Part shown: one piece after another, positions 3,937 to 26,249 of the stretch
How the letters are laid out: every line of letters begins with the position of its first letter
Numbering within the stretch: position 1 is the first letter of the stretch
Assembly (NCBI GenBank): GCA_035084275.1
Contig: CM068764.1
Location: forward strand, 7,812,001 to 7,876,000
DNA length: 64,000 nt
Direction: 5' to 3'
Source of the DNA: Hydrolagus colliei
Taxonomy: Eukaryota
The notes under the pieces: model-generated
What the model saw: the letters and a program-made list of their open reading frames with translations, nothing else
The model's database searches: none
What the model was told of the DNA's origin: nothing
Position numbers and translations under genes: made by a program

Positions 3937-4047
3937 TTGTGTACAAGAAGCCCTGCGAACAGCCATGGAATGAATGGATCTAATCAGAACAATTTGATCT
4001 GGGTAAATTGGTCAGAACACCGGAAGAGAGAAACTCTACTCTTTCTG

Positions 4048-4200
4048 TATGGGTGCATGTTTGTCTGAGCGTGCGTGCATGCGTGCGTTCATGGGTTTGT
4101 GTGTGTGCGTGCATTTGTGCGTCTGTATGTACTTGCAAATGCGTGTGTGCATTTGTGCGTGCGTGTGAGTGTCTATGCGAGTGCACGCATGCATGGGTGT
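4048..4200. repeat. Degenerate (TG/CG/CA)n alternating purine-pyrimidine tract
   Basis: GTGCGTGCATGCGTGCG...GTGTGTGCGTGCATTTGTGCG repeated over about 150 bp. Confidence 0.85.
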
Positions 4201-5312
4201 TGGCGGAGGGGAACGGAAGCACAGGTCAACCATCTGATTACTCACAATCACCCTGAGCCAAACAAATGCAGTCAAGAGTTTGAGAAAGGTTTGTGTCTTC
4301 AAACTGTGACAAATGTCGATGATAATTCAACAATCTGCAGGCCTCAGATTCAGGGAAAATTCACAGGACGTAGAGAAACCTGGATTTCCAAAGCTCCCTT
4401 TCTTTCCCCGCTGAAATACCGTGGCAACGAAAGGAAAGGACGCATCTGTCTTGCGGTCTCCTTGGGGAGCAACGAGGTAATTAGCGCAAAATAAATCAAG
4501 TGACAGAAATAATTAAATTCGAAAATACATTATGTTATAATCCAATCATTGATTCTTTCATGCATTTTTATGTGGGGTGGGTTGTGGCGAGGGCGGGGTA
4601 GTGGGGGTGGGGTGGGGGAGGGAGAGGAAAGGGGAAATAGCAGAGAACTGGAGAGGGAAATGCAAATGTCATTCTGTTCCCAATCCCTTCTCTAAAAAAA
4701 AATTACGCTCCGACCAAAATGCTCAGCAACTAATTTCTTTCTAATCACCAGAGTACTTTAATAATTTCTGTCTCATTTAACATCATTATTTCAAATGCAC
4801 TTTTGTAGAGGTCAAGGAGGCAGCGATTAATTGTGGTTACTTTACCCCCCCACCCCCTCCACCCGCACTCCCCCCCCTCCCACCTCTATATTGAGAAACG
4901 TACAATGTGTGCTGGTAATGAAGTGATCATTTATAATGCACCCACAAGGATGTACAAGGTGATAATTTCCCTCCAGTGACAACGCCCCGAGACTTGCAAC
5001 TCAACTTGCGTTTGTCAAGCGCCGTGCATGCTCACAAGACGGTGTTGCCGTCCACAGTCACTACACTCAACACTGATTACCTACAAAGGCTCTTTATCAT
5101 GTCTCAAAGTTGTGATAAGGCGCTGAATCAAACGCATGTATTATTATTATTATCATATTTATGATGTTTCGATGCGATAGGAGTTGCATCAAATGCGGAG
5201 GTTCTCAAAGGAGGAGGAGAGAGGAAAGAGCAGGTAATTGGGATTAGAGTATAACAGCTCCAGTTCTCCAATTCTATCCTGGCCTCCCCTGCTCTCTCCT
5301 CCCAGGACTTTT

Positions 5313-11556: not shown

Positions 11557-13721
11557 CATGGTCGCACTGTTTCTCTGAATCCCTCTATGTTGTTAGAATG
11601 TCAGCACACAAGGCAAGTAGAAGTCATTTGAGTTGAATCTGTAGTACAGGTATCTCTGAGTCAGTGGCCTGTGGCTATTAAGCCCCACATTGGAACTCAT
11701 TGCCCAGGCCAAACCTTGGAAAACTCTTTCTGTAACATCTTCATTCATTCATTCATTTATTTATTCATGGCATGTTCACAGCAATAATCCTGCAACTGCC
11801 GTTTCTTACTTTGACTGTTACATAACAATACAGTTTCTCTCTGAATGCACAGCAAAGCCGACAACACAATAATGAGAACTGGTGAAAAGCAACAGCGTTA
11901 TGTGTCTGCCTAGACAGAGCTGAGTACACACCATCGACAGCCATGTGGTGTGGAATCCAGCACTGCAGATTTATTCAACTGAATAAACCACTTACAATGC
12001 AGAGCTGATGTAAATAATTCAGTGGTTCTTTGTAGTGTTTGTACCAATAATGTAATCTTTGTACTTATCTATATTATTATTATTATCGTCAATGTGCCTT
12101 TAGTTTTATTGCTATGAGTATGATCGTCCGAGCTTCGCTGACAAAGCAGGTTAGACCTCAGAAATGCGACTTGTGCAGGTTGAAGTCTGTGCGGGTTAAT
12201 ATCAGAGATGTAAATGCCTTCAGTAATGAGTAATTTATAGCGGCAAGGAGGCTAAACACTTCAATCAGTAATGTGGGCGGATAACATATTAACTTCAGTT
12301 TGTTTTTCAATTCCCAGGCTATAATTACTTTGAAGTGAAAGTCACTGCACCACACACTGAAAGACCACAGTTTTTCAAAGAAAATCTCACAGCTTCCAGA
12401 ACTAGACATTTAAACACATATTCCTAAAAAAAAATGAAATCCGGAAGAGATTAATATATTGGAGCTGGTTCTCTAATTAAGCAATAAATCACAAAGTTGC
12501 CAGGGCATCAAGAGTTAATGAGGATAGCTCTAATTGTCACTGTTTTAATTGGCAAACTGTGCCACCCACAGTGGAACTATCAGCCACTTGCAAATGCCAG
12601 CAGACGATTACGAGCCAATGCAAGGCCTGGCTTATTATTTCACTTATCCTTCCTTTTGTGTGAATTTACATTATTAGATACACCATAAATAAAGAAAACG
12701 ACCAGCAATTAATTATCTTAAAATATGTTGTTTTCTAATTTGGCTAATTTTCTGTCGTGCAGAGAGTTGGAGCCAACCACAAGGTCCGCCTGCTTTTCAA
12801 TTCCTCCACCAAAGTAATTCCAGCAAGTTTAAACAACCATTAGAGGTAATGCTGTTTAAAGGGGATATTAAAATCACAAGCAGTGGCTTTTATGTTTTAA
12901 TTAACAAAGATGGGAGGAGTGTTGTCATTTAACGTAGGGGAAAAATAAACACTTAATAAAAGGAGGTTAATGTTAATAGCACTGGGCCACAAGGATCATA
13001 AATACTTTGATGCTGCTGTAAATCTGGATGTACCTTCTGTCGCTTTGGTGCTCAACGCTTGCATCTAACTCAAGCAATCTGAACCCAGTCTGAAAAGTTG
13101 TGTTCTCAAAGCCACAAACGGTAAGCTTCTTTCCACTTTTTAACTCCGAGTCTGAGATATTCTCTCTCTCTCTGTCTCTCTCTCTCTGTGTCTCTCTCTC
13201 TCTGTCTGTTCTCTATCTAATGCAAAGATGCAACCAATTACAGCATATCTCTATTGCTGGCCACTACTTCTATAAATGCACAACAGAGTTTGTAGAAAAG
13301 CAACACCTACAGAGACGCAATTGTCAAAGTGACCCAAACCTAGGCTGGTTTCTTACTACATAGGCAATAGTTTTACATCAGATTTTACTTGCCTTCAATT
13401 TATCATACTACTACAACTAATATTATAATAATAGCATTTAAAATAATATTGAAACATCTCTAACAAAGAGAATCCCAGATGGTTACCATCAAGTCTAATA
13501 ACTGTCTGGTAGGCAAATGTAATTTGCAGTCTGATACTTAAGAAACAAATTTGGAATGTTTGTTTTATAAATGGTGGGAGGGGGTGTTAGGAATGGTGGT
13601 GGAGGGGTGGGGGTGGTAAAAAGCAAGAGGAATGGGGAAGAGCAGTCTTTGAAAATGTTACATTGGAAACCTTTCCATCAGTAGCAGAGGGGGGGCACAC
13701 AAACAAAAAAACAACAGAGAC

Positions 13722-13808
13722 TCCACCTTACAGTACATCCTGTAAAGCACTTTGAGACATCTCAACAACGTGACAAGGCGCTCTATCAAATGCTAAAGGT
13801 TATTATTA
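13722..13808 (+). mobile_element. Main tRNA-SINE tail fragment, about 30 bp from the SRRM3 donor
   Basis: TTACAGTACATCCTGTAAAGCACTTTGAGACATC...GGCGCTCTATCAAATGC. Confidence 0.75.
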
Positions 13809-13839
13809 CACGCTTAGCTCACGGGATCAGTGGACCTAC

Positions 13840-14087
13840 CCCTGCTCTTCCATCATCTCGTGGAGCTCCATGCACTTGAGCTCAACACGCCTTTTTCTCT
13901 CGTGGTCTAGGATCTCTCGGTTGGCTTTCTTCGCCAGGCCCCCTTCCATTTTCTTGGGCTCCTCCTCAGCCTGGCACTCGGTGCTGGCACTGTCTCTGGT
14001 CTGCCGGGCTGTCCCAGTAACTCGCTGCCCACAGCCGTTCGCACAGCTCTCCTGGGTAGTGGCCACGCTCTCGCCGTTGTTGTACAT
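13840..14087 (-). CDS. SRRM3: SRRM3 (serine/arginine repetitive matrix 3), coding part of first coding exon; N-terminus and first half of cwf21 domain
   Basis: Translation MYNNG...EEEPKKMEGGLAKKANREILDHERKRRVELKCMELHEMMEEQG matches the SRRM2/3 cwf21 domain; REILDHE...ELKCMEL is the SRRM3 version (SRRM2 has PDILDHE...ELRCLEL). ATG in GCCATG Kozak context at 14087; phase-2 donor GG|GTAGGT at 13840/13839. Confidence 0.9.
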
Positions 14088-14122
14088 GGCGCTTGGGAGC
14101 AAACGGCTTTGCAGCTTCAACT
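14088..14122 (-). other. SRRM3: 5' UTR portion of the SRRM3 first coding exon
   Basis: Polypyrimidine tract and acceptor CTTCCTCCCCCAG| end at 14123, 35 nt before the ATG, implying an upstream non-coding exon. Confidence 0.75.
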
Positions 14123-14157
14123 CTGGGGGAGGAAGTTAAGACGAAAGATAAAGGTAA

Positions 14158-14466
14158 TCGCCTTACAAACGTGAGACCTGTATTCGAATCCAGGCAGGTC
14201 AGCACAAAACTTTGGGCACGTTTCCTAACTCCGCACACATACACACACATATGCCTAATAATATCCCTCCAAAAAACCAACACAGTAATAAAATTGGTAA
14301 TTTCAATCCATGACTGTTTATGGGGACGCTGCTGTGCGCAAATGGCTGCCGCTTTACACCCACTAATATATACAGTCAATTCACTTTACAATACATTCTG
14401 TGAAGTGATTTGAGACATCTGGAAGACGTGAAAAGCGCTATATCAACAAGCAAGCATTATTATAAT
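14158..14466 (+). mobile_element. Main tRNA-SINE, near full length, about 35 bp from the SRRM3 acceptor
   Basis: Starts in the anticodon arm TCGCCTTACAA; B box, body and tail present. Confidence 0.9.
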
Positions 14467-15267
14467 GAACTTCAGTTCCAGACTTGCTGACGAGTCACAC
14501 TACATCCGCCAGGGTAAGTTTGCAATTCTGAACCGAGGAAGACTAGGCTGCTTGTAAAACACGGTGTTCTTTATCGTAAAGGCAGTTATAGAAGAACCTG
14601 GAGCTATTGAGCTGTCCAAGCATCGCTTAAATTCCAAATTAAGTCTCCATTTCATTGTAAGTCGTCCTCTGCTGTACCACTATTCTGTAACATGCAGCAC
14701 AGGGCAGATCTGAAACATTCTTGTCTCTGGTTCAATAACTTCCCCAGTTTATAATGTGCCTGATGCCCACCTGATTAATCTAACACCTCTACTTGTCCCT
14801 AATCCAATTTGCAGTCCACAGAACAGAATTCAACATCTCGCTGCTCCAGAGAGGGGAATTTCAGTCGCTGCCCCAAATCCGACAACTCCATTGCAGTCTG
14901 CAAACCACTGTCCCCAGTCTCGGTTGAACCTCACTGATCTACACATATCTCTATATAGGCTTGTCCCACAAAATACACAGTCGATTGACTTCACTTTCTG
15001 CGAAGCGCCTTTGATTCGTCTCAACGGCGTGAGGAGGAGCTATCTCGAATATTATTTTAAATATTATAACATCCTCAGGCACATGCGTAACAAGCCTGGA
15101 ACAAGCACAGTTAGCTGATCGCAGCCATAAATCCGGAGGCTCCATTAAAAGAAAATGTGATTACCGTCTGCGGCTTTCAAGATCACAACTGAGACTTGCT
15201 GTTTTTGTTGTGCAAATCATGGTTGTATATGTTTCTCTCTCCCTCCCTCCACTAGTGTGGACTGTAA

Positions 15268-15288
15268 GTCACTGTCCATGGTGCTGAA
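15268..15288 (-). promoter_or_regulatory. RE1/NRSE (REST binding site) 1
   Basis: Minus strand TTCAGCACCATGGACAGTGAC versus consensus TTCAGCACCACGGACAGCGCC; both half-sites and the 2-nt spacer intact. Confidence 0.85.
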
Positions 15289-15329
15289 ACGACTGGCTAC
15301 CTGAATGTCTAGTGTGTATGTGTGGGTGT

Positions 15330-15350
15330 GTTGCTATCCGAGGTGCTGAA
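15330..15350 (-). promoter_or_regulatory. RE1/NRSE (REST binding site) 2
   Basis: Minus strand TTCAGCACCTCGGATAGCAAC; canonical left half, canonical spacing, tolerated right-half variant GGATAGC. Confidence 0.8.
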
Positions 15351-15403
15351 AGGAAATCAGTCCCTATCTATTCTGTGCGTGTGTCTGTCACTTTTTCTTT
15401 TAA

Positions 15404-15412
15404 GGTGCTGAA
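15404..15412 (-). promoter_or_regulatory. RE1 left half-site
   Basis: Perfect TTCAGCACC, 62 bp from the previous core; no right half at canonical spacing. Confidence 0.5.
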
Positions 15413-15444
15413 ATGATCTCACTCACTCACTCTTTCTCCCCCCA

Positions 15445-15446
<2 letters not shown>

Positions 15447-15484
<38 letters not shown>

Positions 15485-15504
15485 ATCTCTCTCTCTCTCT
15501 CTCT
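15447..15504. repeat. (CT)n microsatellite
   Basis: Directly visible, one interruption. Confidence 0.95.
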
Positions 15505-15513
15505 TGTGTGTGC

Positions 15514-15534
15514 TCTGCTGTCCATAATGCCGAG
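15514..15534 (-). promoter_or_regulatory. Degenerate RE1-like site
   Basis: Minus strand CTCGGCATTATGGACAGCAGA; right half GGACAGC perfect, left half degenerate. Confidence 0.3.
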
Positions 15535-16267
15535 GGTAGAGCTTGCTGAGAAGGTTGCAAGTTAGAGCCGTGAATATTCCTGGTATCACGCTGAGTGTGT
15601 GTGTGTGGCAGCAGGCGGCTTGGCTACCCACAGTGATTAACAGTCGACTATCCCAGAATAAGCTTTGAGATACCACTGATCCCCTCCCCAATCTGTCACC
15701 GCAACAGTCTCTAGTGGCCAAACAAGAAAAGCTTTCGACGACATGAAGTCTCCAAACCTGACAATAAGACAGACTGTCTGCAGGGTGGTTGGGAGAAAGA
15801 GTTGGAAATGTTGTACTACCAACCACTGTGCTCAGTTATACACATACATATATCCATACATAGATACATACATATATACATATATCTCAACTGAATTTAG
15901 AAACTGCCCCTGGAAAAAAATTGCATTTAACACACTCCACTTGGTCCATTTACACACAGGGAATCGGAGACCTAACAATCCACACAGTCCTCCCTCCTTT
16001 AAAGCTCAACTTTCATGGCAAATCAGCAAGAAAACCATCGACTAACAGGAACAAAAACACACAATTAAATTACATAAAAGGCAGAAGTTCAACCATGTCC
16101 AAAGAAAAAAAATACATACACTAAATATACACACTAAAAATAGATATCATTTTTCCTATTTAAATAAATTTTATGTGAGGGGGAGGGGTGGGAGGGCGAC
16201 AACAACACAGTATAGATTGATTAACATTGGTAATACTAACAGGAAAAGCTTAATTAATTAAGAACAA

Positions 16268-16402
16268 TTGCAAAACACTGCAGATGTTGGAAAATCTGAC
16301 ATTAAAAAACACAAAGTCACTGGGAAAACACTTCGGCGTTCAGGCATTGACTCACTTTCTTTCTCCCCATAGATGCTGCCTTTCCCAGTGGCTTCTGTGT
16401 AT
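16268..16402. mobile_element. Shark-type palindromic repeat (Penelope-associated terminal repeat remnant)
   Basis: CTGCAGATGTTGGAAAATCTGA...ACACAAAGTCACTGGGAAA and inverted arm TAGATGCTGCCTTTCCCAGTGGCTTCTGTGT; same family as 38285-38390 and 58991-59130. Confidence 0.55.
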
Positions 16403-17493
16403 TGGTGTGTGGGTGTGTGTTTAAAAAAAAAATGTGTGAAAGCTTAACTAAGGTTTGGTTCACGCAATTTTCAATTTGTTCAACTTCCCAACAGAGAGAG
16501 AGAAAGAAAGAAACGTTTAGCGCTCAGCCTCTTACACGCTGCAACACACACGATCTGTGGTGATGGTTGCTTGTGGTTGAGTGGAAATTCTCTCGCTGTC
16601 GTTTGGGTCATTTGAATGGAAGAATACACAAACACAAGATACATTAAAAACACACACACACAAAGCCAAAGACAGCGAATGGAGTCACTTACCACGGATT
16701 GGATTGACACTGTGTCTCTCTCTTTCTCTCTGTTTCTCTCTCTCTCTCTCTCACCACCGCCCGTCTGCTATCAGCATAAACAGACTGCAAACATTCTCCA
16801 GTGTTGACCTACCTATCTCACACAGCGGCTCTTTCTCCCTTCCATTGCCCTGTTAAAGGCTTTCATTGTGTTTAGCCTAACCCAAGCCAAGCCTTGGTCC
16901 TCTCCTCTCCTCCTTCCCCGCAGCCTGGGTGGGTTGGTGAGTGTTTGTGGTAGAAACAAGCTGCAATGATGTGGGCAGAGGCAAAGGCAGAGAGAGAGCC
17001 CTAACACATACACACGCAGACAGACAGACTGAGCAGCAGCCAATGTGACTCTCTCTCTCAATGTGAAACCCAATCAGCTACGAATTTCTCAGCTCAAGTT
17101 ATCCCCCAGGCAAGAGGTTGACACCAATAGATCCCACTGTTCCCCCTTCTCTCCAGGTTCCCTGGTTTTCTCCCTCCCCACACACACACACACACACAAG
17201 GGGGTTACACAAGCACTGTTTATTCCTCACTTCTCCTCTCTCCCCTCCAGTCATTGAGCCTTTATTAATGTCACAGCCAGAAAGCCTTTTAATCTTCAGA
17301 GCTGCACCTATGCAGTTGCTGGGGCCCTAGATCTCACTTTAACCCTTCCAGTGCCTTGCTGTTGAAAGCAACTGCTTTGTTTTTCTCTTCTGTGTGTGTG
17401 TGTGTGTGTGTGTATTGTGGACTTGCAGGGTAGAGTGGTAGAAATGGTGTTTTTTTCTTCTTCCACAGAATATACAGTACAGTACTGTAAAGT

Positions 17494-17806
17494 GGAGTGC
17501 TGTAGCTCAGTGGTTAGAGAACTCGCCTCGCAAGTGGGAGTTCGATTCCCAGCCAGGGCAAAACCTTGGGCAAGTATCTTTACGCCACATGCCTGATTAA
17601 AAATCCCTCAAAGAAAAAACAATATTAAATTAGTCATTTTCAATCCACGACTGTTTTGGGGACACTGCTGTGTGCAATCGGCTGCCGTGTTTCGCCCACA
17701 AATATGCAGTCAAATCACTTTACAGTATATCCCGTGAAGCGTTTCAGATGTTTGGAAGATGTGAAAGGCGATATATCAAATGCAAGGATTAGTATTATTA
17801 TTATTA
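17494..17806 (+). mobile_element. Main tRNA-SINE, full length
   Basis: A box TAGCTCAGTGG, B box GTTCGATTCC, body, (ATT)n tail. Confidence 0.9.
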
Positions 17807-17932
17807 GAAAGTGAATTGACCGTATATTGTTTTGCACACAAAATATATGGTCAATTTACTTTCCTGTGAAGCGCTTTGAGACGTCTCAACGACGTGACCA
17901 GGTGCTATATCAGTTGCAAGGATTATTAATAT
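17807..17932 (+). mobile_element. Second SINE tail with 5' fold-back inversion
   Basis: Extra tail copy preceded by a 22-bp inverted copy of itself. Confidence 0.75.
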
Positions 17933-18457
17933 TAGACCTCTTCTGACTGCAACACACTGTCCTTATCAAGTGTCTTTCCTCCAAGGGATGTTTCCATGGA
18001 GCGTTAAGCGTGACTAGCCTGTAGAATGGCTGATGCCAAGCTCACAGAACACACCAGCTCAGCCTCAACATTTACCCAAGCTTGTGAATTATTGATACGA
18101 AAGCGGGGGTGAGGAGGGCGTTTGATATCTTTCATCACCAAAATGCGATCAAGTGTACAGTGTATACAGCCCTCCCCCAGCGTAGTAAATTAATCCCATG
18201 ATTGAAAGGTGAAACAGATACATTGGTATGTGTATTGCTCTCACCTTCGCACAGAGAAATAAAACCTCACTAACATTTCCTCCAATGTAGGCAATGGGAC
18301 AGAAGGCTTAGAAGCTATTAAGCATGGTGATGGGTTTCCACATGTGTCAGACACCAGGCTAACTACACCCAAAAATTGCCAAATTATATGTTGAGAGTTA
18401 TCCTCTCCTGCCCACACCCCCAGAGCCCCCCCCCCCGCCATCCATTCCTTTGATTTT

Positions 18458-18560
18458 CGGGCAAGCATTTAGCCACTCTGCCCCCTACCTCTGGAACTCC
18501 ATTCTGCAGTCCCTCTGCCTCGCCCCCTCCCTGGCCTCCTTCAAGTCCCTTCTCAAGACT
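18458..18560 (+). mobile_element. L2 LINE ORF2 extreme C-terminal fragment
   Basis: Translates as AFSHSAPYLWNSILQSLCLAPSLASFKSLLKT, matching the L2 RAFS..AP.LWN.LP...FKS.LKT motif. Confidence 0.8.
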
Positions 18561-19589
18561 GTAATGTTGTTGTTATTGTTGTTAATTTTCAGAAAAATAT
18601 AAAAATCAATCCTGTATCTGTAAAATTTATTTAAAATCTAGAACTGCAACTTCTCCGCATCAGTATTATCATTTGGAGGAAAGAAAAAAGAACCAAAACT
18701 TTTTTTGGCTGCTGTGTTTCGCCCACATATATACAGTCAATTCACTTTTCAGTATATTCTGTGAAGCGTTTGGGGCATCTAGAGAGGTCAGGGTAGGGGA
18801 AGGGGAAGGAGAGTAGGAGTCTGTCTTGGCTTTATTAAACTCGGTCTTTCTAATGTGTTAATTAATTTTGATGTGTTTTTACCAATTATCTGTCACTGAG
18901 TTATTAATAATAACTGTTGGAGATGCTTCAGTTTTTTTAAAAAGAAAATGCGCTTTATGTAATTCAGTAAGTATCTATCCGTATCATTATCTAGTCAGAA
19001 AAATGAAGACCAAAGTCCAATTAAGTCTTAATGCATTTTGTACAAAATATAATAATGTGAGCCTCCGGACATGTTGGCTGTAGAGTGACAGTTTGGACAT
19101 CAAGATTGGACCTCACTGACAATTTCAGGTGTACAAATTGCTGTGAGCAGATTAAGATGTCGAACATGAATCAATCTAAACGTTTACAGAGTTTTCATAC
19201 GAGGCCAGCGATGGAAAGCAAGTGCCTCAGCAAATCTCACCTCAACTGTAGGCCTGGTTTTGAATTTACAAGAAACTTTCACTCGAATCTAGTGGCGGCG
19301 CTTGATGTGACGCTCTTCTCGGTATTGCAAAGAGATTCTAAACTTGACCCAAAGGGGTCGCGTGAACTGTCTGAGCCAGCTTTTTGGTGACCAGAGAAGT
19401 TTGTCAAACCGAGCCACTACACGATCAATGAAGGCATGTGACAAGACTGCCAAGCAAGCAATTATGAGTGAGTGTTATAGCTGCTGGTGCCCAGGCAGTC
19501 CATGCAAGGTTGCATCAGAAATAACCATATTGTCATGGACCTCACGCACGTTTGCGCTTGAAGATGCATGAGCAGTTTTGTCCCGGTAG

Positions 19590-19852
19590 ACCATTTCGCC
19601 CACAAAATATACAGTCAATTATTCACTTTACAGCATATTCTGTGAAGCACTTTGAGACGTCGATAAAATGTGAAAAGCGCTATATCAAATGCAAGGATTA
19701 TTATGTATTATTAGATAACATTATTGACTGCTGCGTTTCGCCCACAAAATGTAGTCCATTCATTTCATGGCGTATGTTGTGAAGCATTTTGAGAAGTCTT
19801 ATCACATCGGCATAAGGCGCTATATCAAATGCAAGTATTATTATTATTATTA
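19590..19852 (+). mobile_element. Two tandem SINE 3' tails
   Basis: TTTCGCCCACAAAAT...GTGAAGCA...GCGCTATATCAAATGCAAG twice in tandem. Confidence 0.8.
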
Positions 19853-20847
19853 GTGTTGTTATTCATATTCATCAAAAGCGTTCACTTCCAAAGAGGCTAT
19901 TTTATGAGTTGTACGCATATAAAAATCAATATGGCTCTGTGTTTGCCGTTTCACTGAGTTGCGGTTTAATATCACAACACACTGCAGAGCCCAGGCAAAT
20001 CTACACAAAATTACTGACGCGTGTAAATGATAGATGCAGGTTTCATTATTTTAATGTTGTAACTACTTGAAAACGGTATTAAATGGATGACAAGTTCTCT
20101 CATTAAGAAGGCTTAATTATCTCGGGCAAGTTTGCTCTTTTTAATGGAAACAAACATTTTGATTAGCTATGACAAAACTAACGCAAACTGGAAACGTGTC
20201 CGGGGAGAGTAAAACAGCACAATAGCTCCATGTACCTTTAATACCGGGAGGCAAGAGACATGGAAGCACATTTGACAAGCCGAGGATGTCAGTTCTATTA
20301 TGTAATAATGAGTCACTCCTGGCTACAAAGCTGATAATCTGCTCAGAGCTCGCCACCTTTAGTTTTGTATCTGACTGACATCGATGATGCCGGCACTCAT
20401 CCCAAACGAGTGAAGATTGGCAGCTTTCAAAGCACCGTAATAATAATTTTAATTGTTGCATTTCTTGTAGCAGCTTATTACGCAATTGAGACGCCCTGAA
20501 GCGCTTTGCTGGACACGCCGGACGGACAGTGCGATGACTGTACGTACGTACATACATACGTCTTGTGGGCGAACCAGGCAGCAGTATCAGCCACAAATAT
20601 TAGAAAGCTTTAAAACAGAGAGGCAATAAAATTGTAATTGTAAAATGAGGCACTGTAAATACTAAAGAGAAATGTTAACATTAGGATATAAGTGGAACTA
20701 AACGCTGTTGGGATTGTCTTTATCGCTCCCAGTTCTCCCTTTGAGGATAGTTAAAAACAGAACCTGAGTTAAAACTGAAGCATTTGGGTAGGAATATTAC
20801 AAATCAGAACCCAGACTTCTATATTTCGCGCTACTGAGAATCCAGCT

Positions 20848-21255
20848 ACATAGGAACAGAAGGGGGCCATTCAGGCCCTCAGGCCTGTTCCGTCATTCCA
20901 TAAGATCTGTACCTCAGCCCCATTTACCTGCTATTGCCCCATATTCCATACCACAATAATAATTTATTATTATTCCCTGATACCCTGATCAAACAAATAT
21001 CTATCCACCTCAAGTGTTGAAAATTTGAATTGATCCAGCATTCACGGGAAAGAATTCCAAATTTACGTGACCCTTTGGGTGAAAAACTGCCTCCTGATTT
21101 AACTCCTAAATGGCCTCGGTCTAATGTTACGATTACGCCCTCCTTGTTCTGGAATTCTCCCTCAGAGGAAAATAGTTTCTTTGTAGCTACCCTATTGAAT
21201 ACCTTTATTATTTCGAAAACCTAAATCAGTTCACCCCTCAACCTTCTACACTCAA
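20848..21255 (-). mobile_element. CR1 LINE 3' remnant
   Basis: ACATAGGAACAGAAGGGGGCCATTCAGGCCCTC...TCTATCCACCTC...GGGAAAGAATTCCAAAT...TCACCCCTCAACCTTCT. Confidence 0.75.
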
Positions 21256-21707
21256 TTGCAAATATCGCAAATTTTGACCTGAACTGTGTTTATTCCACAC
21301 GAGCGAGAGAGATACCAGGGCTCAGGTTTGTTCATCCACAGAAATGCCCAGCGTAGAATCCTGTTGAGCGAAGTGTTGGAATATGATTTTTATTCCATTC
21401 ATGAGCAGACTTGTATAACTCAATAGTCACATCGTCACTCATGAATTATGAGAAATTGGCTTCAGCCGAGGAATGAAAATTTGTATTCCGAGGCTCGCCG
21501 TGAGGTCTTTTTCATTTAGCTCGACGTGCTGGGTTGGTCGCTCACTCATGGAAAGCAAACAACGTGAGTGAGGCAGTGGCGATGGCACAGGAAAATGACC
21601 ACCGGAAAGAAACCGAGGCAGAAAACAGGCACTCAGTATCTCTGGAAGTCATTAACAACGACGACAAAATGACACTTGTATAGCGTCAGGAGGACGTCCC
21701 AAGTTAT

Positions 21708-22035
21708 AATATATAATAATAATTCTTGCATTTGATGTAGCGCTTTTCACGTCTTATCGACGTCTCAACGCGTTTCACAGAATATACTGTAAAGTGAATT
21801 GACTGTATATTTGTGGGCGAAACGCAGCAGCCAATTGTACACAGCAGTGTCCTCTACAAACGGTCGGATTGAAATGACCAATTTTTATTAGTGTTGTTTT
21901 TTCTGGAGGGATTATTATTAGGTGTGTGTGTGGAGTAATGAAACTTGCCCAAGGTTTCGCCCTGACCTGCCTGGATTCGAACACAGGTCTCACGCTTGTA
22001 AGGCGAGCACTCTAACCACTGAGCTACAGGAGCTC
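21708..22035 (-). mobile_element. Main tRNA-SINE, full length
   Basis: Complete head (A/B boxes, TAC loop), body and tail. Confidence 0.92.
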
Positions 22036-22885
22036 TACAAAGACAGGTTTTTTCAATGCTTTTCCAAGTGAAAGGCTTGCAATGTTTCCCATCTTGATGG
22101 AAGTGGAACCATGGAGAGAGCAAACTCAAAGGCATTTTGCAACAAATGAAATCAAAAGGAATAATAATAATCTTTGTAACCAATACAGTGTCTCAAAGCA
22201 CTTCATAGATTTACTGTAAAGCGCAGTGCAGTTCTGTATGTATAAGAAAGCTTTGTGTGTAAGTAAAACGTTAATGAAATTTGGCAAAAATAGCAAAGCT
22301 ACAATAGGAATATTAATGTGGGTGGAGGGAGAAGGTTATAATGTGGCTAATGTTCCCTTGTCTGGCTAAGTTTTGATATGATGCCATTAAGGTATTATGA
22401 GGGTATGTTTCTCTATTGTCTGACTCTAAATTCAAGTACTGAACACACTATATCTACTCCGTGGCCTGTGCCTTTCAAAGTGGAATGCTAATAAATATTG
22501 TTTTGGATGTGCTCGACTTGTTATCAACGCACGTAGAGATAAAATGTTTTTTTGATATCCCGTCTTCGCTGGATAAACAAAAAATGGGAGCTGAGACGCT
22601 CTAGCGAAACATACACAAACGAGGAGCGAGACAAGAGATGAAAGATGAATTCTCAGCATCTGATTACTGCATAACTCCAAAAGCAGGTTTGACAGAGTCA
22701 AAGGCACGGCGCTTTGACAATAAAAGGAGCGGGTGTGCGGGACCCAGAACGATGACGGCAATAGATGCTGAAGTATATTGTGTTTTAATTAGTTCCCTCA
22801 AACGACGACTCGGATCTCGGCAAGGAAAGCAAAATCTGCCTTGCTGAGAAGCTACGTCGGTTATTATTTTGCAACTAACTTTCGT

Positions 22886-23192
22886 GAGATCCTGTATGCT
22901 CGGTGGTTAAGAGGACTCGCCTTACACACGAGAGACCCGGGTTCAATTCCAGGCAGGTTGGGGCAAAATCCTGGGCAAGTTTCCTTACTCCACACACACG
23001 CCTGATAATAATCCCTCCCCCTAAAAATTGGCCATTTCCATCCACGACTGTTTGTGGGGGACACTGCTGTGCGCAATTGGCTGCCACAATTAGTTGCGCC
23101 CACAAATATACTGTATATTCTGTGAAGTGCTTTGAGATGTCTAGAAGATGTGAAAAGCGCCAGATCAAATGCAAGTATTATTATTATTATTA
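22886..23192 (+). mobile_element. Main tRNA-SINE, full length
   Basis: Head CTCGCCTTACACACGAGAGACCCGGGTTCAATTCC is strongly tRNA-Val-like; body and tail present. Confidence 0.9.
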
Positions 23193-24409
23193 ACTATATA
23201 CTCTTTGAGTTTTGACCAGTCCTGGAGGGAAGTCAGTAAAGGCAGGTTCAAGGTCATCTACTAAACAAGGATCACTAAGACTGGAGAAAGGTTGGTTATT
23301 TGCTGTTATTGAGATTTTCCATTCTAAACATGTCCAGTGTTTTCAAAAATTGACAGATGGTACGTTTTCACTGAGGGACCCAGGTGATCTGATATATATA
23401 TATATAAACGATGCTTGCGTTAGATATGGCATCTCTCAGTCTTGGAAGATGATTCAAAGCGCTTTGTTGGATCACCGTAGAGTGTAGCGTCTCAGTATTT
23501 CTATGCAACGATAATGCAATGGTAAGCACTGATTAGCTGCATGGTGTCAAGCTCCAGTGTAAAATGGATGATGTGAAAAAGCTTGAGAAAATAACATCTG
23601 ATATCGTTCAGAATACTGTAGTATTGCTTCGTACTCCGAGGCAGTGAATGGCTCAATCTCAGATCTTGTCTTTCAACTCAACTGGATTTTTGAGGCTTTT
23701 ATTGTTTTGTGAAAATCTGCTCTAGGCTGACCGGCAGTTAAATCGATTGCACTACTTGGCATTTCAATGCCTTGGGATGTCCTCCTGACGTTGAGGATGC
23801 TCTATAAATGTAATTGTGTTGTTATTGTTTGTTGGTATTCACAATGCAATGGATCTCCACTTTTTTTAAAAAAAAATCAAGCGCAGAAAAGAACATGTTT
23901 TTAGGATTAGTTGCCCGTTTTGAAGGGCAAATTAAAACTCTACTTATCACTGACTGTTTTGAGGGACCTTGCTGTGCGCAGTTGGCTGCCGCGTCTCGCA
24001 GATAAAATACAGGGTCAATTCACTTTACGTTTTGTGATGCGTTTTGAGACTCAACGACTCAACTTTGCGTCTCAACTAAATGATAGAGGAGCTTTGATTA
24101 AAGGCAAGGATCAAATTGTTTCCATTTTCGTTACTGCACACAGCCACTCCGATCAGCTTGTATAACACAGGTGTAAATAAAAGCTTTATCCCTCTGCTCC
24201 CCTCCTTTGTTCAGCTCTGTGAAGAGTTCAAGGTAAGCGGTTCATCGGTAGGATCCATGCCAAGGCAATGAGCTAGGCTTGATTTCAATGGCCCACTTTC
24301 TCAATATACCTTTCACATCTGTCAGTATCAGTGTGGTTCTGTTGGCTGGGCACCTTATTACTTACATCCGTATTAAAGAGATGTTTTGCAGTAGTAGCGG
24401 GGCAGCCAA

Positions 24410-24510
24410 TAACAACAACAGCAACAACTTCGATTTACATAGCGCCCTCACTCCACGCCGGAAGGCGTCTCAGAGCGCTTCACAGTAACGGATCCCGGGA
24501 CCGAGCCGGG
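24410..24510 (-). mobile_element. L2-type 3' tail, variant ending in (GTT)n
   Basis: Homologous to 30815-30883 and 58779-58852 (GAAGCGCTCTGAGA...GTGGAGGGCGCTATATAAATC). Confidence 0.65.
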
Positions 24511-25261
24511 GCCAGGCGTAGAAAGGTGACCCAAGGCGCAGTCGAAGAGAAAGGTTCTTTAGCGCAATTGGAATTGCAGTAGGTCGTGGGACCCAGTAAC
24601 AAAAGGCCCTTGCGTGAATGTGGGTCGGGGGAAATTCCCACTCGGAACAATTTCTGCACGTTCCACATCGACAGAGGGATGGTGCCCTTATCTGAACGTA
24701 CACGCTGAACTCATTATTAATATCACAGGAGATAATTTTTAACTGGCGAAGAAATAGCATGAGCGATGAAGAATCACTTCAATCATATTATCTCCCCTGA
24801 ATTATTATCAATCTGGCAAGATTAACATCGCCATTCATCTTAGTGGGAAGCCCATTTTTCACTGTGCCATGTTCGTCTGCATTTTCACTGATGTAGCTTC
24901 GACGAGTTATGAAGACGGAGGGAGAAAAATGAACTCCACTGTTCAACCTACTTTCATCAAAGCGAGCAGCGGGATTAGCAGTTGGGATGATTCAGCGAAG
25001 GTAAAGATGTCATCCTTAGATTGAACAGAGGCAGCTAAGTCGCTCTAGGCTGGGAACTCACTAGGCATTTGATGATTTTGTTAATATATCTTCTCTTTTT
25101 TTTTTAGCAGCCAATTGGTACTCAAAGTTGGCAAGCCTGACCTATCGTAGATAATGCTTTGACTCACACTCTCAGTGCCGGCGGCAATTGATCTCAAAGG
25201 TTCACAAGCAATTCTGAAATAAACATTATTGCCTGTTAATACAACCAAACTGCTATATTGC

Positions 25262-25485
25262 TTTATTTCGCCCACAACAAATACATAGCCGCTGAATACT
25301 ACTGTACATATTCTGTGAAGAGCTTTGAAATTGGCCATTTCAATCCACGACTGTTTGTGGGACGCTGCTGTGCGCAATTCGCCCACAAATATACAGTCAA
25401 TTCACTTTACAGGATATCCTGTGAAGCGTTTTGAGACGTCAACAAGATGCGAAAAGCGCTATATCAAAATGCAAGGATTAGTCTT
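25262..25485 (+). mobile_element. Main tRNA-SINE 3' fragments, rearranged
   Basis: Partial tail followed by a 3' half copy. Confidence 0.8.
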
Positions 25486-26249
25486 ATTCTTATCAAGCTT
25501 CTGATTATTTCAGCTTCTTTCTCAGATGAGAGGTTAATCAGAGAATGCCAGTATTACCATACGACCATAAGCGACTTGGGGCTTCTTGACGTGAACGTCG
25601 TTTGAAAAAACCCCTGTAAATTTGTCATTTGCACTGGCTACTGGTGGATGGGCGATATTTGTGTTAGAACATGTTCTGAAACATGGCAATACCGACAATC
25701 CAGCCCATGCTTCCTCCTCTGCAATAAAACTGCTTGAGTGATGGATACGAATAACGATTCTGCCTTTCACCTCACTCATCTGTTCCCTGTGTTCCTACCC
25801 GACTGTGGAACTGAGTTTGAAGTTTGCGACTGCTGTTGTCTTATGCGATCAGTCAAATACGGCTCGTCAATAATGGGAACTGCATCGGAACTGAAATGCT
25901 CATTATCCTCGGAGCCATATCAATATTCAAGAAGCAACATTCAAAGCACTGACAGTCAGTCACTGCTCCAGATGCTCTTTTCTGTGAACATTAGCCAGTA
26001 CACACATGAACGAGCCTCTTATCTCTAACTATTGTGGTTACACCACATTCCCCCTATCATATAATCATAATCCTTACATTTGATACAACATCATCGAGAC
26101 AGCTCGAAGCATTTCGCAGAGTGTTTGTCTATCGCCGACTAATACGGCATCCAACTTTGTACAGAGAACAATGTGCCTGAAACATCCATGAGTGAATGAG
26201 GAATTGTTGAGCACTGACTGCTCCTTCTGAACCACAGTCCCACACATTT

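What the first reader, a model, noticed from the sequence alone, without database searches (positions are those of the whole stretch)
15268..15534. Co-oriented REST/RE1 array with an exact 62-bp period next to SRRM3
Seen: GGTGCTGAAA starts at 15280, 15342 and 15404, exactly 62 bp apart. The first two are complete RE1 21-mers, the third a perfect left half-site, and a fourth degenerate site lies 122 bp further, across a (CT)n tract. All are in one orientation, about 1.15-1.4 kb upstream of the first coding exon. Known: REST represses the neural microexon regulators SRRM4/SRRM3 in mammals, and these proteins promote splicing that inactivates REST (REST4). Inference: this feedback switch is hard-wired in a cartilaginous fish through a multi-site silencer. 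62 bp is about six helical turns, so the sites would sit on one DNA face. The spacers share little similarity, so the period could be an old triplication or selected spacing.
Basis: partly seen in the sequence, partly recalled or inferred. Interest (0 to 1): 0.8.

Follow-up and report, generated by a model that had tools for sequence, protein, structure and literature searches.

The report
Tandem REST-site cluster upstream of SRRM3
A cartilaginous fish carries a small head-to-tail cluster of binding motifs for the neuronal-gene repressor REST just upstream of the start of the splicing-factor gene SRRM3; this is a known kind of silencer at a gene known to be REST-controlled in mammals, and its neat 62-base spacing looks like a leftover of local duplication.

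Summary
GGTGCTGAAA occurs three times in 64 kb, at 15280, 15342 and 15404. It is the window's only equally spaced non-simple 10-mer triple.

On the minus strand:
- Site 1 (15268-15288) matches the published RE1/NRSE consensus fully.
- Site 2 (15330-15350) has one mismatch.
- Site 3 is a left half-site.
- Site 4 (15514-15534) is degenerate and not significant alone.

The gene is on the minus strand. Its first coding exon (13840-14087) encodes a cwf21 N-terminus, and every gene-named hit is SRRM3. The motifs lie 1.18-1.45 kb upstream of the ATG, in sense orientation.

REST control of Srrm3 is published for mouse and human. Head-to-tail RE1 clusters of up to five motifs, with variable spacing, are published for human and ascribed there to tandem duplication.

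Units 2 and 3 keep in-register similarity beyond the motif. In a relative about 3% diverged, a 6-base deletion makes the first spacing 56. Selected helical phasing is therefore not supported.

REST binding, the transcription start and deep conservation could not be tested. Verdict: a new member of a known kind, of modest interest.

The parts
15268..15288 (-). RE1/NRSE site 1, full 21-mer: TTCAGCACC-AT-GGACAG-TGAC on the minus strand
   Evidence: 0 mismatches to TCAGCACCNNGGACAG and to TYAGMRCCNNRGMSAG. Unchanged in a second sample of the same species (X5).
15330..15350 (-). RE1/NRSE site 2, near-consensus: TTCAGCACC-TC-GGATAG-CAAC
   Evidence: One mismatch, T where the consensus has S. No change is listed in X5 or X6.
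15385..15412 (-). Site 3: perfect left half-site TTCAGCACC (15404-15412). No right half at the canonical 2-nt linker. TGACAG (15385-15390) follows a 13-nt linker.
   Evidence: A 6-mer within 1 mismatch of GGACAG at a linker expanded by 7-11 nt is expected by chance about 0.023 of the time. Lone half-sites and expanded spacers are bound in vivo according to PMC2573930.
15514..15534 (-). Site 4, degenerate: perfect right half ATGGACAGC, poor left half (TCGGCATT)
   Evidence: 3 mismatches to the 16-mer consensus, one of 103 such hits in the window. It lies on the same strand and is offset 246 bp from site 1.
15312..15331 (.). GT-rich tract in the spacer between sites 1 and 2; place of the 6-base deletion in relative X6
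   Evidence: '15320 left out 6', one contig, depth 67.8 of 127.2.
15445..15504 (.). (CT)30 microsatellite between sites 3 and 4
   Evidence: Tandem Repeats Finder: period 2, 30 copies. Contigs of all the runs laid break here.
13840..14122 (-). First coding exon of the SRRM3 orthologue: probable acceptor AG at 14124-14123, ATG at 14087, donor GT at 13839-13838
   Evidence: Sequence; Pfam cwf21, E 2.8e-8; 121 homologues, all gene-named ones SRRM3. The frame upstream of the ATG is not shared with the Callorhinchus model, so that part is probably 5'UTR.
14158..14446 (.). High-copy interspersed repeat (SINE-like) between the RE1 cluster and the exon
   Evidence: Summed contig depth of 1e6 to 5e6 against about 50 for unique sequence. 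Loose ends at 14158 read like a tRNA-type head. Further copies within the window.

Best explanation
This is a head-to-tail cluster of REST binding motifs (RE1/NRSE) on the sense strand of the SRRM3 orthologue of a chimaera-like cartilaginous fish. It lies 1.18-1.45 kb upstream of the start codon. It holds one full-consensus site, one near-consensus site, one left half-site and one degenerate site.

Most likely it works as a REST-dependent silencer. In non-neural cells and progenitors REST would occupy site 1, site 2 more weakly, and possibly the half-site. It would recruit its corepressors and keep SRRM3 off. When REST falls in neurons, SRRM3 would be expressed.

The exact 62-bp period is best read as the footprint of a local tandem duplication of a roughly 62-bp unit, not as selected helical phasing.

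Shown here: the motifs, their orientation, their rarity in the window, the gene's identity, residual unit homology, and the variable spacing in a close relative. Inferred: REST binding, repression, and the feedback onto REST splicing.
For: Motifs:
- The window's only two RE1-core hits sit 62 bp apart on one strand.
- The 17-mer consensus used is the published one (PMC4430910, passage read).
- The 10-mer triple is unique in the window.

Gene:
- cwf21 exon on the minus strand.
- Named homologues are SRRM3.

Biology:
- Srrm3 is de-repressed by dominant-negative REST, reduced by REST overexpression, and called a REST target gene in mouse (PMC7652395, passages).
- SRRM3 rises on REST knock-down and falls on REST overexpression in human cells (PMC4459148, section 8).

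Known class:
- Human has 27 RE1 pairs within 100 bp and groups of up to five. All are head-to-tail, distances vary, and the authors ascribe them to tandem duplication (PMC1557810, passages).

Duplication:
- Units 2 and 3 match in register at 13 of the 21 bases after the 10-mer. Shuffle p is about 0.001, and 0 of 50 other offsets reach this.
- All three copies share TCnTTTCAGCACC, reaching 4 bases beyond the motif.

Spacing:
- It is 56 rather than 62 in relative X6.
- It is unchanged in a second sample of the same species, X5: 5 of 5 differences of that contig are listed, none in the sites, and there are no gaps.

Copy number:
- The cluster region has near single-copy depth, so it is not a high-copy transposon.
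Against: - No binding or expression data exist here: all 11 listed runs are DNA or unknown, none RNA.
- Units 1 and 2 show no spacer similarity (7 of 40), so a triplication is only half documented. An exact 62/62 spacing surviving full decay of one spacer is a little odd under pure neutrality.
- Against the relative, the cluster region is no more conserved than its flanks: 8 differences in 235 bases against 15 in 415 and 25 in 854. Site 1 itself took 2 changes in 21 bases. At 3% divergence this test has little power either way.
- Site 2 breaks the consensus at one position, and its affinity is unknown.
- Three of the 8 mismatches of the X6 contig are not itemised in the output, so the identity of sites 2 and 3 in that relative is probable, not shown.
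Confidence: 0.62

Rival explanations
1. The 62-bp period is itself selected. Three REST complexes would sit on one face of the helix, within about one nucleosome length (15268-15413 is 146 bp), and bind cooperatively or position a nucleosome.
For: - The exact 62/62 spacing is unique in the window.
- It is kept with no indel in two samples of the species.
- 62 bp is 5.9 turns.
- The spacer between units 1 and 2 has lost all similarity while the length is exact.
Against: - Relative X6 has 56 bp between sites 1 and 2, about 120 degrees out of phase, through a deletion in a slippage-prone GT tract.
- Published human tandem RE1s have no fixed distance, and the authors conclude that REST-REST contacts are not important (PMC1557810).
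- The third element is only a half-site.
Confidence: 0.07
2. The motifs are a neutral relic. A duplicated stretch happens to carry RE1-like sequence but is not occupied by REST in vivo, for example because chromatin is closed or site 2 and the half-site are too weak.
For: - There is no excess conservation against the 3%-diverged relative.
- Two substitutions fall in site 1.
- Microsatellites and SINE insertions around the cluster suggest a loosely constrained region.
Against: - A 14-of-14 core match is expected only about 5e-4 times per 64 kb by my own arithmetic, and the shuffle mean is already only 0.38 at up to 2 mismatches.
- It sits next to the start of a gene that is a REST target in mammals.
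- Both substitutions in the relative are consensus-preserving.
Confidence: 0.2
3. The repeated 13-mer TCnTTTCAGCACC serves something other than REST. On the sense strand it reads like a 3' splice acceptor (pyrimidines followed by CAG), so it could mark cryptic or alternative acceptors of an upstream non-coding exon. TGCTGA could also be a half-site for another factor.
For: - Identity extends 4 bases beyond the RE1 motif in all three copies.
- The cluster may lie in an intron, since a polypyrimidine-AG acceptor precedes the coding exon at 14124-14123.
Against: - Sites 1 and 2 also carry the right half GGACAG/GGATAG at the canonical 2-nt spacing, which a splice-site reading does not explain.
- No RNA data support any exon here.
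- The extra flank identity is explained by duplication.
Confidence: 0.05

Closest known systems
Tandem head-to-tail RE1 clusters of human REST target genes such as SNAP25 and L1CAM (Johnson et al. 2006, PMC1557810; passages read)
   Same: Two or more RE1s lie within 100 bp. All are head-to-tail, in groups of up to five, with a strong site next to weaker ones. They are proposed to arise by tandem duplication and to recruit REST at low concentration.
   Different: This one is in a cartilaginous fish and at SRRM3. It shows an exact equal period over three elements, and one element is only a half-site. Whether SRRM3 is in that paper's list of human tandem RE1s could not be checked, because the list is in supplements, which are closed.
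REST-SRRM3/SRRM4 cross-regulation in mammals (PMC7652395, passages; PMC4459148, section 8)
   Same: The target gene is the same, SRRM3. The expected logic is the same: REST represses SRRM3, and SRRM3/4 promote the REST splice form that inactivates it.
   Different: The mammalian evidence is functional (expression changes, ChIP-seq cited). Here there is only motif evidence. The passages I read do not give the position or number of RE1s in mammalian SRRM3, so orthology of the sites is unknown.
Non-canonical RE1s: lone half-sites and half-sites with expanded spacers (Johnson et al. 2008, PMC2573930; passages)
   Same: Site 3 is a lone left half-site, or a left half plus TGACAG after a linker 11 nt longer than canonical. 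This fits the reported classes: left half alone in 5% of sites, spacers expanded by 7-11 bp.
   Different: The right-half candidate has one mismatch and a chance expectation of about 0.02. No binding data.

Membership tests
RE1/NRSE (REST binding site) | Match to the 17-bp consensus NTYAGMRCCNNRGMSAG, with left and right halves 2 nt apart | tested here: met
   Site 1 has 0 mismatches and site 2 has 1. The consensus is quoted in PMC4430910. Sites 3 and 4 do not meet it: one is a half-site only, the other has 3 mismatches.
RE1/NRSE (REST binding site) | Occupied by REST in chromatin or in vitro (ChIP, EMSA) | not testable with these tools
   No ChIP data for this organism, and only DNA runs were found.
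RE1/NRSE (REST binding site) | Represses the linked gene in REST-expressing cells | not testable with these tools
   Needs reporter or knock-out experiments.
Tandem head-to-tail RE1 cluster (Johnson et al. 2006) | Two or more RE1s within 100 bp of each other | tested here: met
   Sites 1 and 2 start 62 bp apart.
Tandem head-to-tail RE1 cluster (Johnson et al. 2006) | All motifs in the same orientation | tested here: met
   All four elements are on the minus strand.
Tandem head-to-tail RE1 cluster (Johnson et al. 2006) | Origin by tandem duplication (similarity of the units beyond the motif) | tested here: inconclusive
   Units 2 and 3 match at 13 of 21 bases in register, p about 0.001. Units 1 and 2 match at 7 of 40. 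A flank beyond the motif is shared by all three.
SRRM3 orthologue | N-terminal cwf21 domain | tested here: met
   PF08312, E 2.8e-8, 34.1 bits against a cut-off of 23.2. The exon ends at profile position 24 of 44.
SRRM3 orthologue | Closest named relatives are SRRM3, not SRRM1, 2 or 4 | tested here: met
   Of 121 hits, those carrying a gene name are all SRRM3 or SRRM3-like (Rhincodon, Gekko, Tauraco, Saguinus, Ictidomys). Identity is 52-54% over 98-100% of the exon in birds and mammals. Caveat: only proteins of 46-145 aa were candidates, so full-length SRRM1/2 could not appear.
SRRM3 orthologue | C-terminal eMIC domain and the rest of the gene | not tested
   These lie outside the window. No further cwf21-encoding exon was found in the window by a pattern scan.

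The most novel reading that the evidence does not exclude
The three co-oriented elements, spanning 146 bp at an exact 62-bp step, form a selected nucleosome-length platform. It would load several REST complexes on one DNA face and give SRRM3 a sharp, switch-like response to falling REST. This multi-site wiring of the REST-SRRM3 double-negative loop would date back to the jawed-vertebrate ancestor.
Probability: 0.06. Interest if true: 0.6.

Novelty: new member of a known kind. Interest (0 to 1): 0.3.

Why it matters
In vertebrates the neural microexon programme is restricted to neurons by transcriptional control of Srrm3 and Srrm4. In non-vertebrates the same is done by RNA processing of a single Srrm234 gene (bioRxiv 10.1101/2021.02.24.432780, passage read).

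A good RE1 cluster at the 5' end of SRRM3 in a chimaera-like fish suggests that REST control of this gene is not a mammalian peculiarity. It may go back to early jawed vertebrates, which would place the REST-SRRM double-negative loop near the origin of the paralogues.

That is an expected conservation, and it rests on motifs only. The one unusual claim, selected 62-bp phasing, is weakened by the 56-bp spacing in a close relative. The value is therefore a concrete, testable silencer candidate for comparative work, not a new mechanism.

Tried and rejected
- **RNA evidence for the transcription start, and for intron or promoter position.** The run search returned no RNA run. Whether the cluster lies in intron 1 or upstream of the promoter stays open. 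A SINE-like insert at 14158-14446 right before the exon, together with a polypyrimidine-AG at 14124-14123, makes an intron more likely. This is inference.
- **CpG-island search for a promoter.** There is no clear island near the cluster. CpG observed/expected is raised (0.7-0.9) at 19-26 kb at low G+C. Not followed up.
- **Deep conservation.** Only relatives about 3% diverged were reachable. Runs X7 and X11 had no contig over 15096-15890. No vertebrate genome collection is on hand, so sharks, skates, gar, coelacanth and amniotes could not be compared.
- **Next SRRM3 exons in the window.** A pattern scan for the rest of cwf21 found nothing. The rest of the gene lies beyond the window's start.
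- **Tandem Repeats Finder.** It does not report a 62-bp period, because the units are too diverged.
- **Transposon origin.** Rejected, because the cluster has near single-copy depth.
- **tRNA scan for SINE heads.** Found none in 12000-20000.
- **Position of RE1s in mammalian SRRM3.** It is not given in the passages read. The Cell Reports 2019 paper is not held. Supplements, including the list of human tandem RE1s in PMC1557810, are closed and may bear on this.
- **Print search.** Searches listed no paper on RE1s at SRRM3 in non-mammals, or on RE1 maps in cartilaginous fishes. That is a statement about those four searches only.
- **Position weight matrix.** No JASPAR matrix was available, so scoring used consensus patterns only.
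- **Joined gene model.** The single exon was searched on its own.

Full report
**What is in the sequence**

The 10-mer GGTGCTGAAA stands at 15280, 15342 and 15404 on the + strand and nowhere else in the 64-kb window. Shuffles gave a mean of 0.23 copies, and 1 of 100 reached three. A script that listed every 10-mer present at three equally spaced places (step 15-300 bp) found 25. Of these, 24 are simple repeats and the remaining one is this triple. So the period is real and unique in the window.

Read on the minus strand, the 10-mer is T plus the left half of the REST site, TTCAGCACC. The RE1 core TCAGCACCNNGGACAG, with up to two mismatches, hits twice in the window. Both hits are here and both are on the minus strand:
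- 15272-15287, no mismatch;
- 15334-15349, one mismatch (GGATAG).

The shuffle mean was 0.38, and 7 of 100 shuffles reached two. The degenerate consensus TYAGMRCCNNRGMSAG gives the same two hits.

The third element has no right half at the canonical spacing. TGACAG follows after a 13-nt linker, which is 11 nt longer than canonical, with a chance expectation of about 0.023.

The fourth element (15514-15534) has a perfect right half and a poor left half. With three mismatches it is one of 103 such hits in the window, so it carries no weight alone.

**The gene**

Its first coding exon has these features:
- The ATG is at 14087.
- The reading frame runs to a GT donor at 13839-13838.
- A polypyrimidine tract with AG at 14124-14123 precedes it.
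- The 94-aa open frame matches Pfam cwf21 at E 2.8e-8.

It found 121 proteins:
- the best is a Callorhinchus milii CWF21-domain protein, at 87% identity and full coverage;
- two shark entries follow at 68-69%, one of them named SRRM3-like;
- bird, primate and rodent entries named SRRM3 come at 52-54% over 98-100% of the query.

Every hit that carries a gene name is SRRM3. The length filter (46-145 aa) means that full-length SRRM1 or SRRM2 could not appear.

The frame upstream of the ATG differs from the Callorhinchus model, so that stretch is probably 5'UTR.

**Surroundings**

A high-copy SINE-like repeat fills 14158-14446, between the cluster and the exon. Its summed depth is 1e6 to 5e6, against about 50 for unique sequence. 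More copies lie at 13700-13793 and from 17452 on.

The cluster itself has near single-copy depth, so it is not transposon-borne.

A GT-rich tract (15312-15331) and a (CT)30 microsatellite (15445-15504) lie within the array.

No RNA run was available. Whether the cluster is in an intron or upstream of the promoter is open. The acceptor-like signal and the SINE just before the exon favour an intron; this is inference.

**Origin of the period**

In register, the spacers of units 2 and 3 agree at 20 of 40 bases. Over the first 21 bases after the 10-mer they agree at 13 of 21, with shuffle p about 0.001, and none of 50 other offsets reaches this. For the full 40 bases, 2 of 50 offsets do reach the observed value, because both spacers are CT-rich.

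Units 1 and 2 show nothing beyond the motif (7 of 40).

All three copies share TCnTTTCAGCACC, four bases beyond the RE1 motif.

So a duplication is documented for units 2 and 3 and is plausible for unit 1.

**Relatives**

Contigs of four runs were laid on 13700-17700.

- **Second sample of the same species (X5).** It covers 14417-15415 with five differences, all listed, none in the sites, and no gap.
- **Relative about 3% diverged (X6).** One contig covers 15181-15415.
  - It has two substitutions in site 1: 15270 C>T and 15283 G>T, at motif positions 19 and 6. Both are allowed by the consensus.
  - It has a 22-base deletion at 15197.
  - It has a 6-base deletion at 15320, in the GT tract. The first spacing there is 56 bp, 5.33 turns, about 120 degrees out of phase.
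  - No change is listed in sites 2 and 3. Three of that contig's eight mismatches are not itemised in the output, so their identity is probable, not shown.
- **The other two runs (X7, X11).** They have no contig over 15096-15890.

The cluster region is not more conserved than its flanks: 8 differences in 235 bases against 15 in 415 and 25 in 854. At this divergence that says little.

**What is known**

- Srrm3 is called a REST target gene in mouse. It is de-repressed by dominant-negative REST and reduced by REST overexpression, and SRRM3 in turn inactivates REST by splicing (PMC7652395, passages).
- In human cell lines SRRM3 rises on REST knock-down and falls on REST overexpression (PMC4459148, section 8).
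- Tandem RE1s are a described class. In human there are 27 pairs within 100 bp and groups of up to five. All are head-to-tail, with no fixed distance. The authors conclude that REST-REST contacts are not important and that the arrangement reflects tandem duplication (PMC1557810, passages).
- Lone half-sites and spacers expanded by 7-11 bp are bound in vivo (PMC2573930, passages).

Earlier notes of this scan report near-consensus RE1s at other classic target genes of this genome, and another REST site further inside SRRM3. I did not check these. They are leads only.

**Verdict**

The best reading is a REST silencer cluster of the known tandem head-to-tail kind, at a gene known to be REST-controlled in mammals, here in a cartilaginous fish. 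The exact period is most simply a duplication footprint that has not yet been disturbed in this species, and it is already disturbed in a close relative.

REST binding, repression, the feedback onto REST splicing and deep conservation are inferred, not shown. This is a new member of a known kind, of modest interest.

Noticed in passing
window 14158-14446, 13700-13793, 17452-17900, 18707-18771: Copies of a very high-copy interspersed repeat: summed contig depth of 1e5 to 5e6 in all four runs laid. Loose ends at its 5' edge read like a tRNA-derived head, so it is a SINE. One copy sits only about 35 bp upstream of the probable acceptor of the first coding exon of SRRM3.
   Followed up: partly
window 19001-26000: CpG observed/expected is raised (0.7-0.9) over about 7 kb at low G+C (0.40-0.46), against 0.25-0.46 around it. 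This may be an unmethylated region, and possibly the SRRM3 promoter or another regulatory block.
   Followed up: no
window 14088-14122 (minus strand): The stretch just upstream of the SRRM3 ATG resembles the N-terminal extension of the Callorhinchus gene model (AEAAKPF...), but in a different frame here. The extension in that model is therefore probably untranslated leader, not protein.
   Followed up: partly
window 15385-15412 (minus strand): The 'lone' left half-site is followed by TGACAG after a 13-nt A-rich linker. It may be a non-canonical RE1 with an expanded spacer rather than a bare half-site. Chance expectation is about 0.02.
   Followed up: partly
window 14906-15039 and 16246-16379: Two short stretches with moderately raised contig depth (about 4000-5000 against about 50): members of lower-copy repeat families flanking the cluster.
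   Followed up: no
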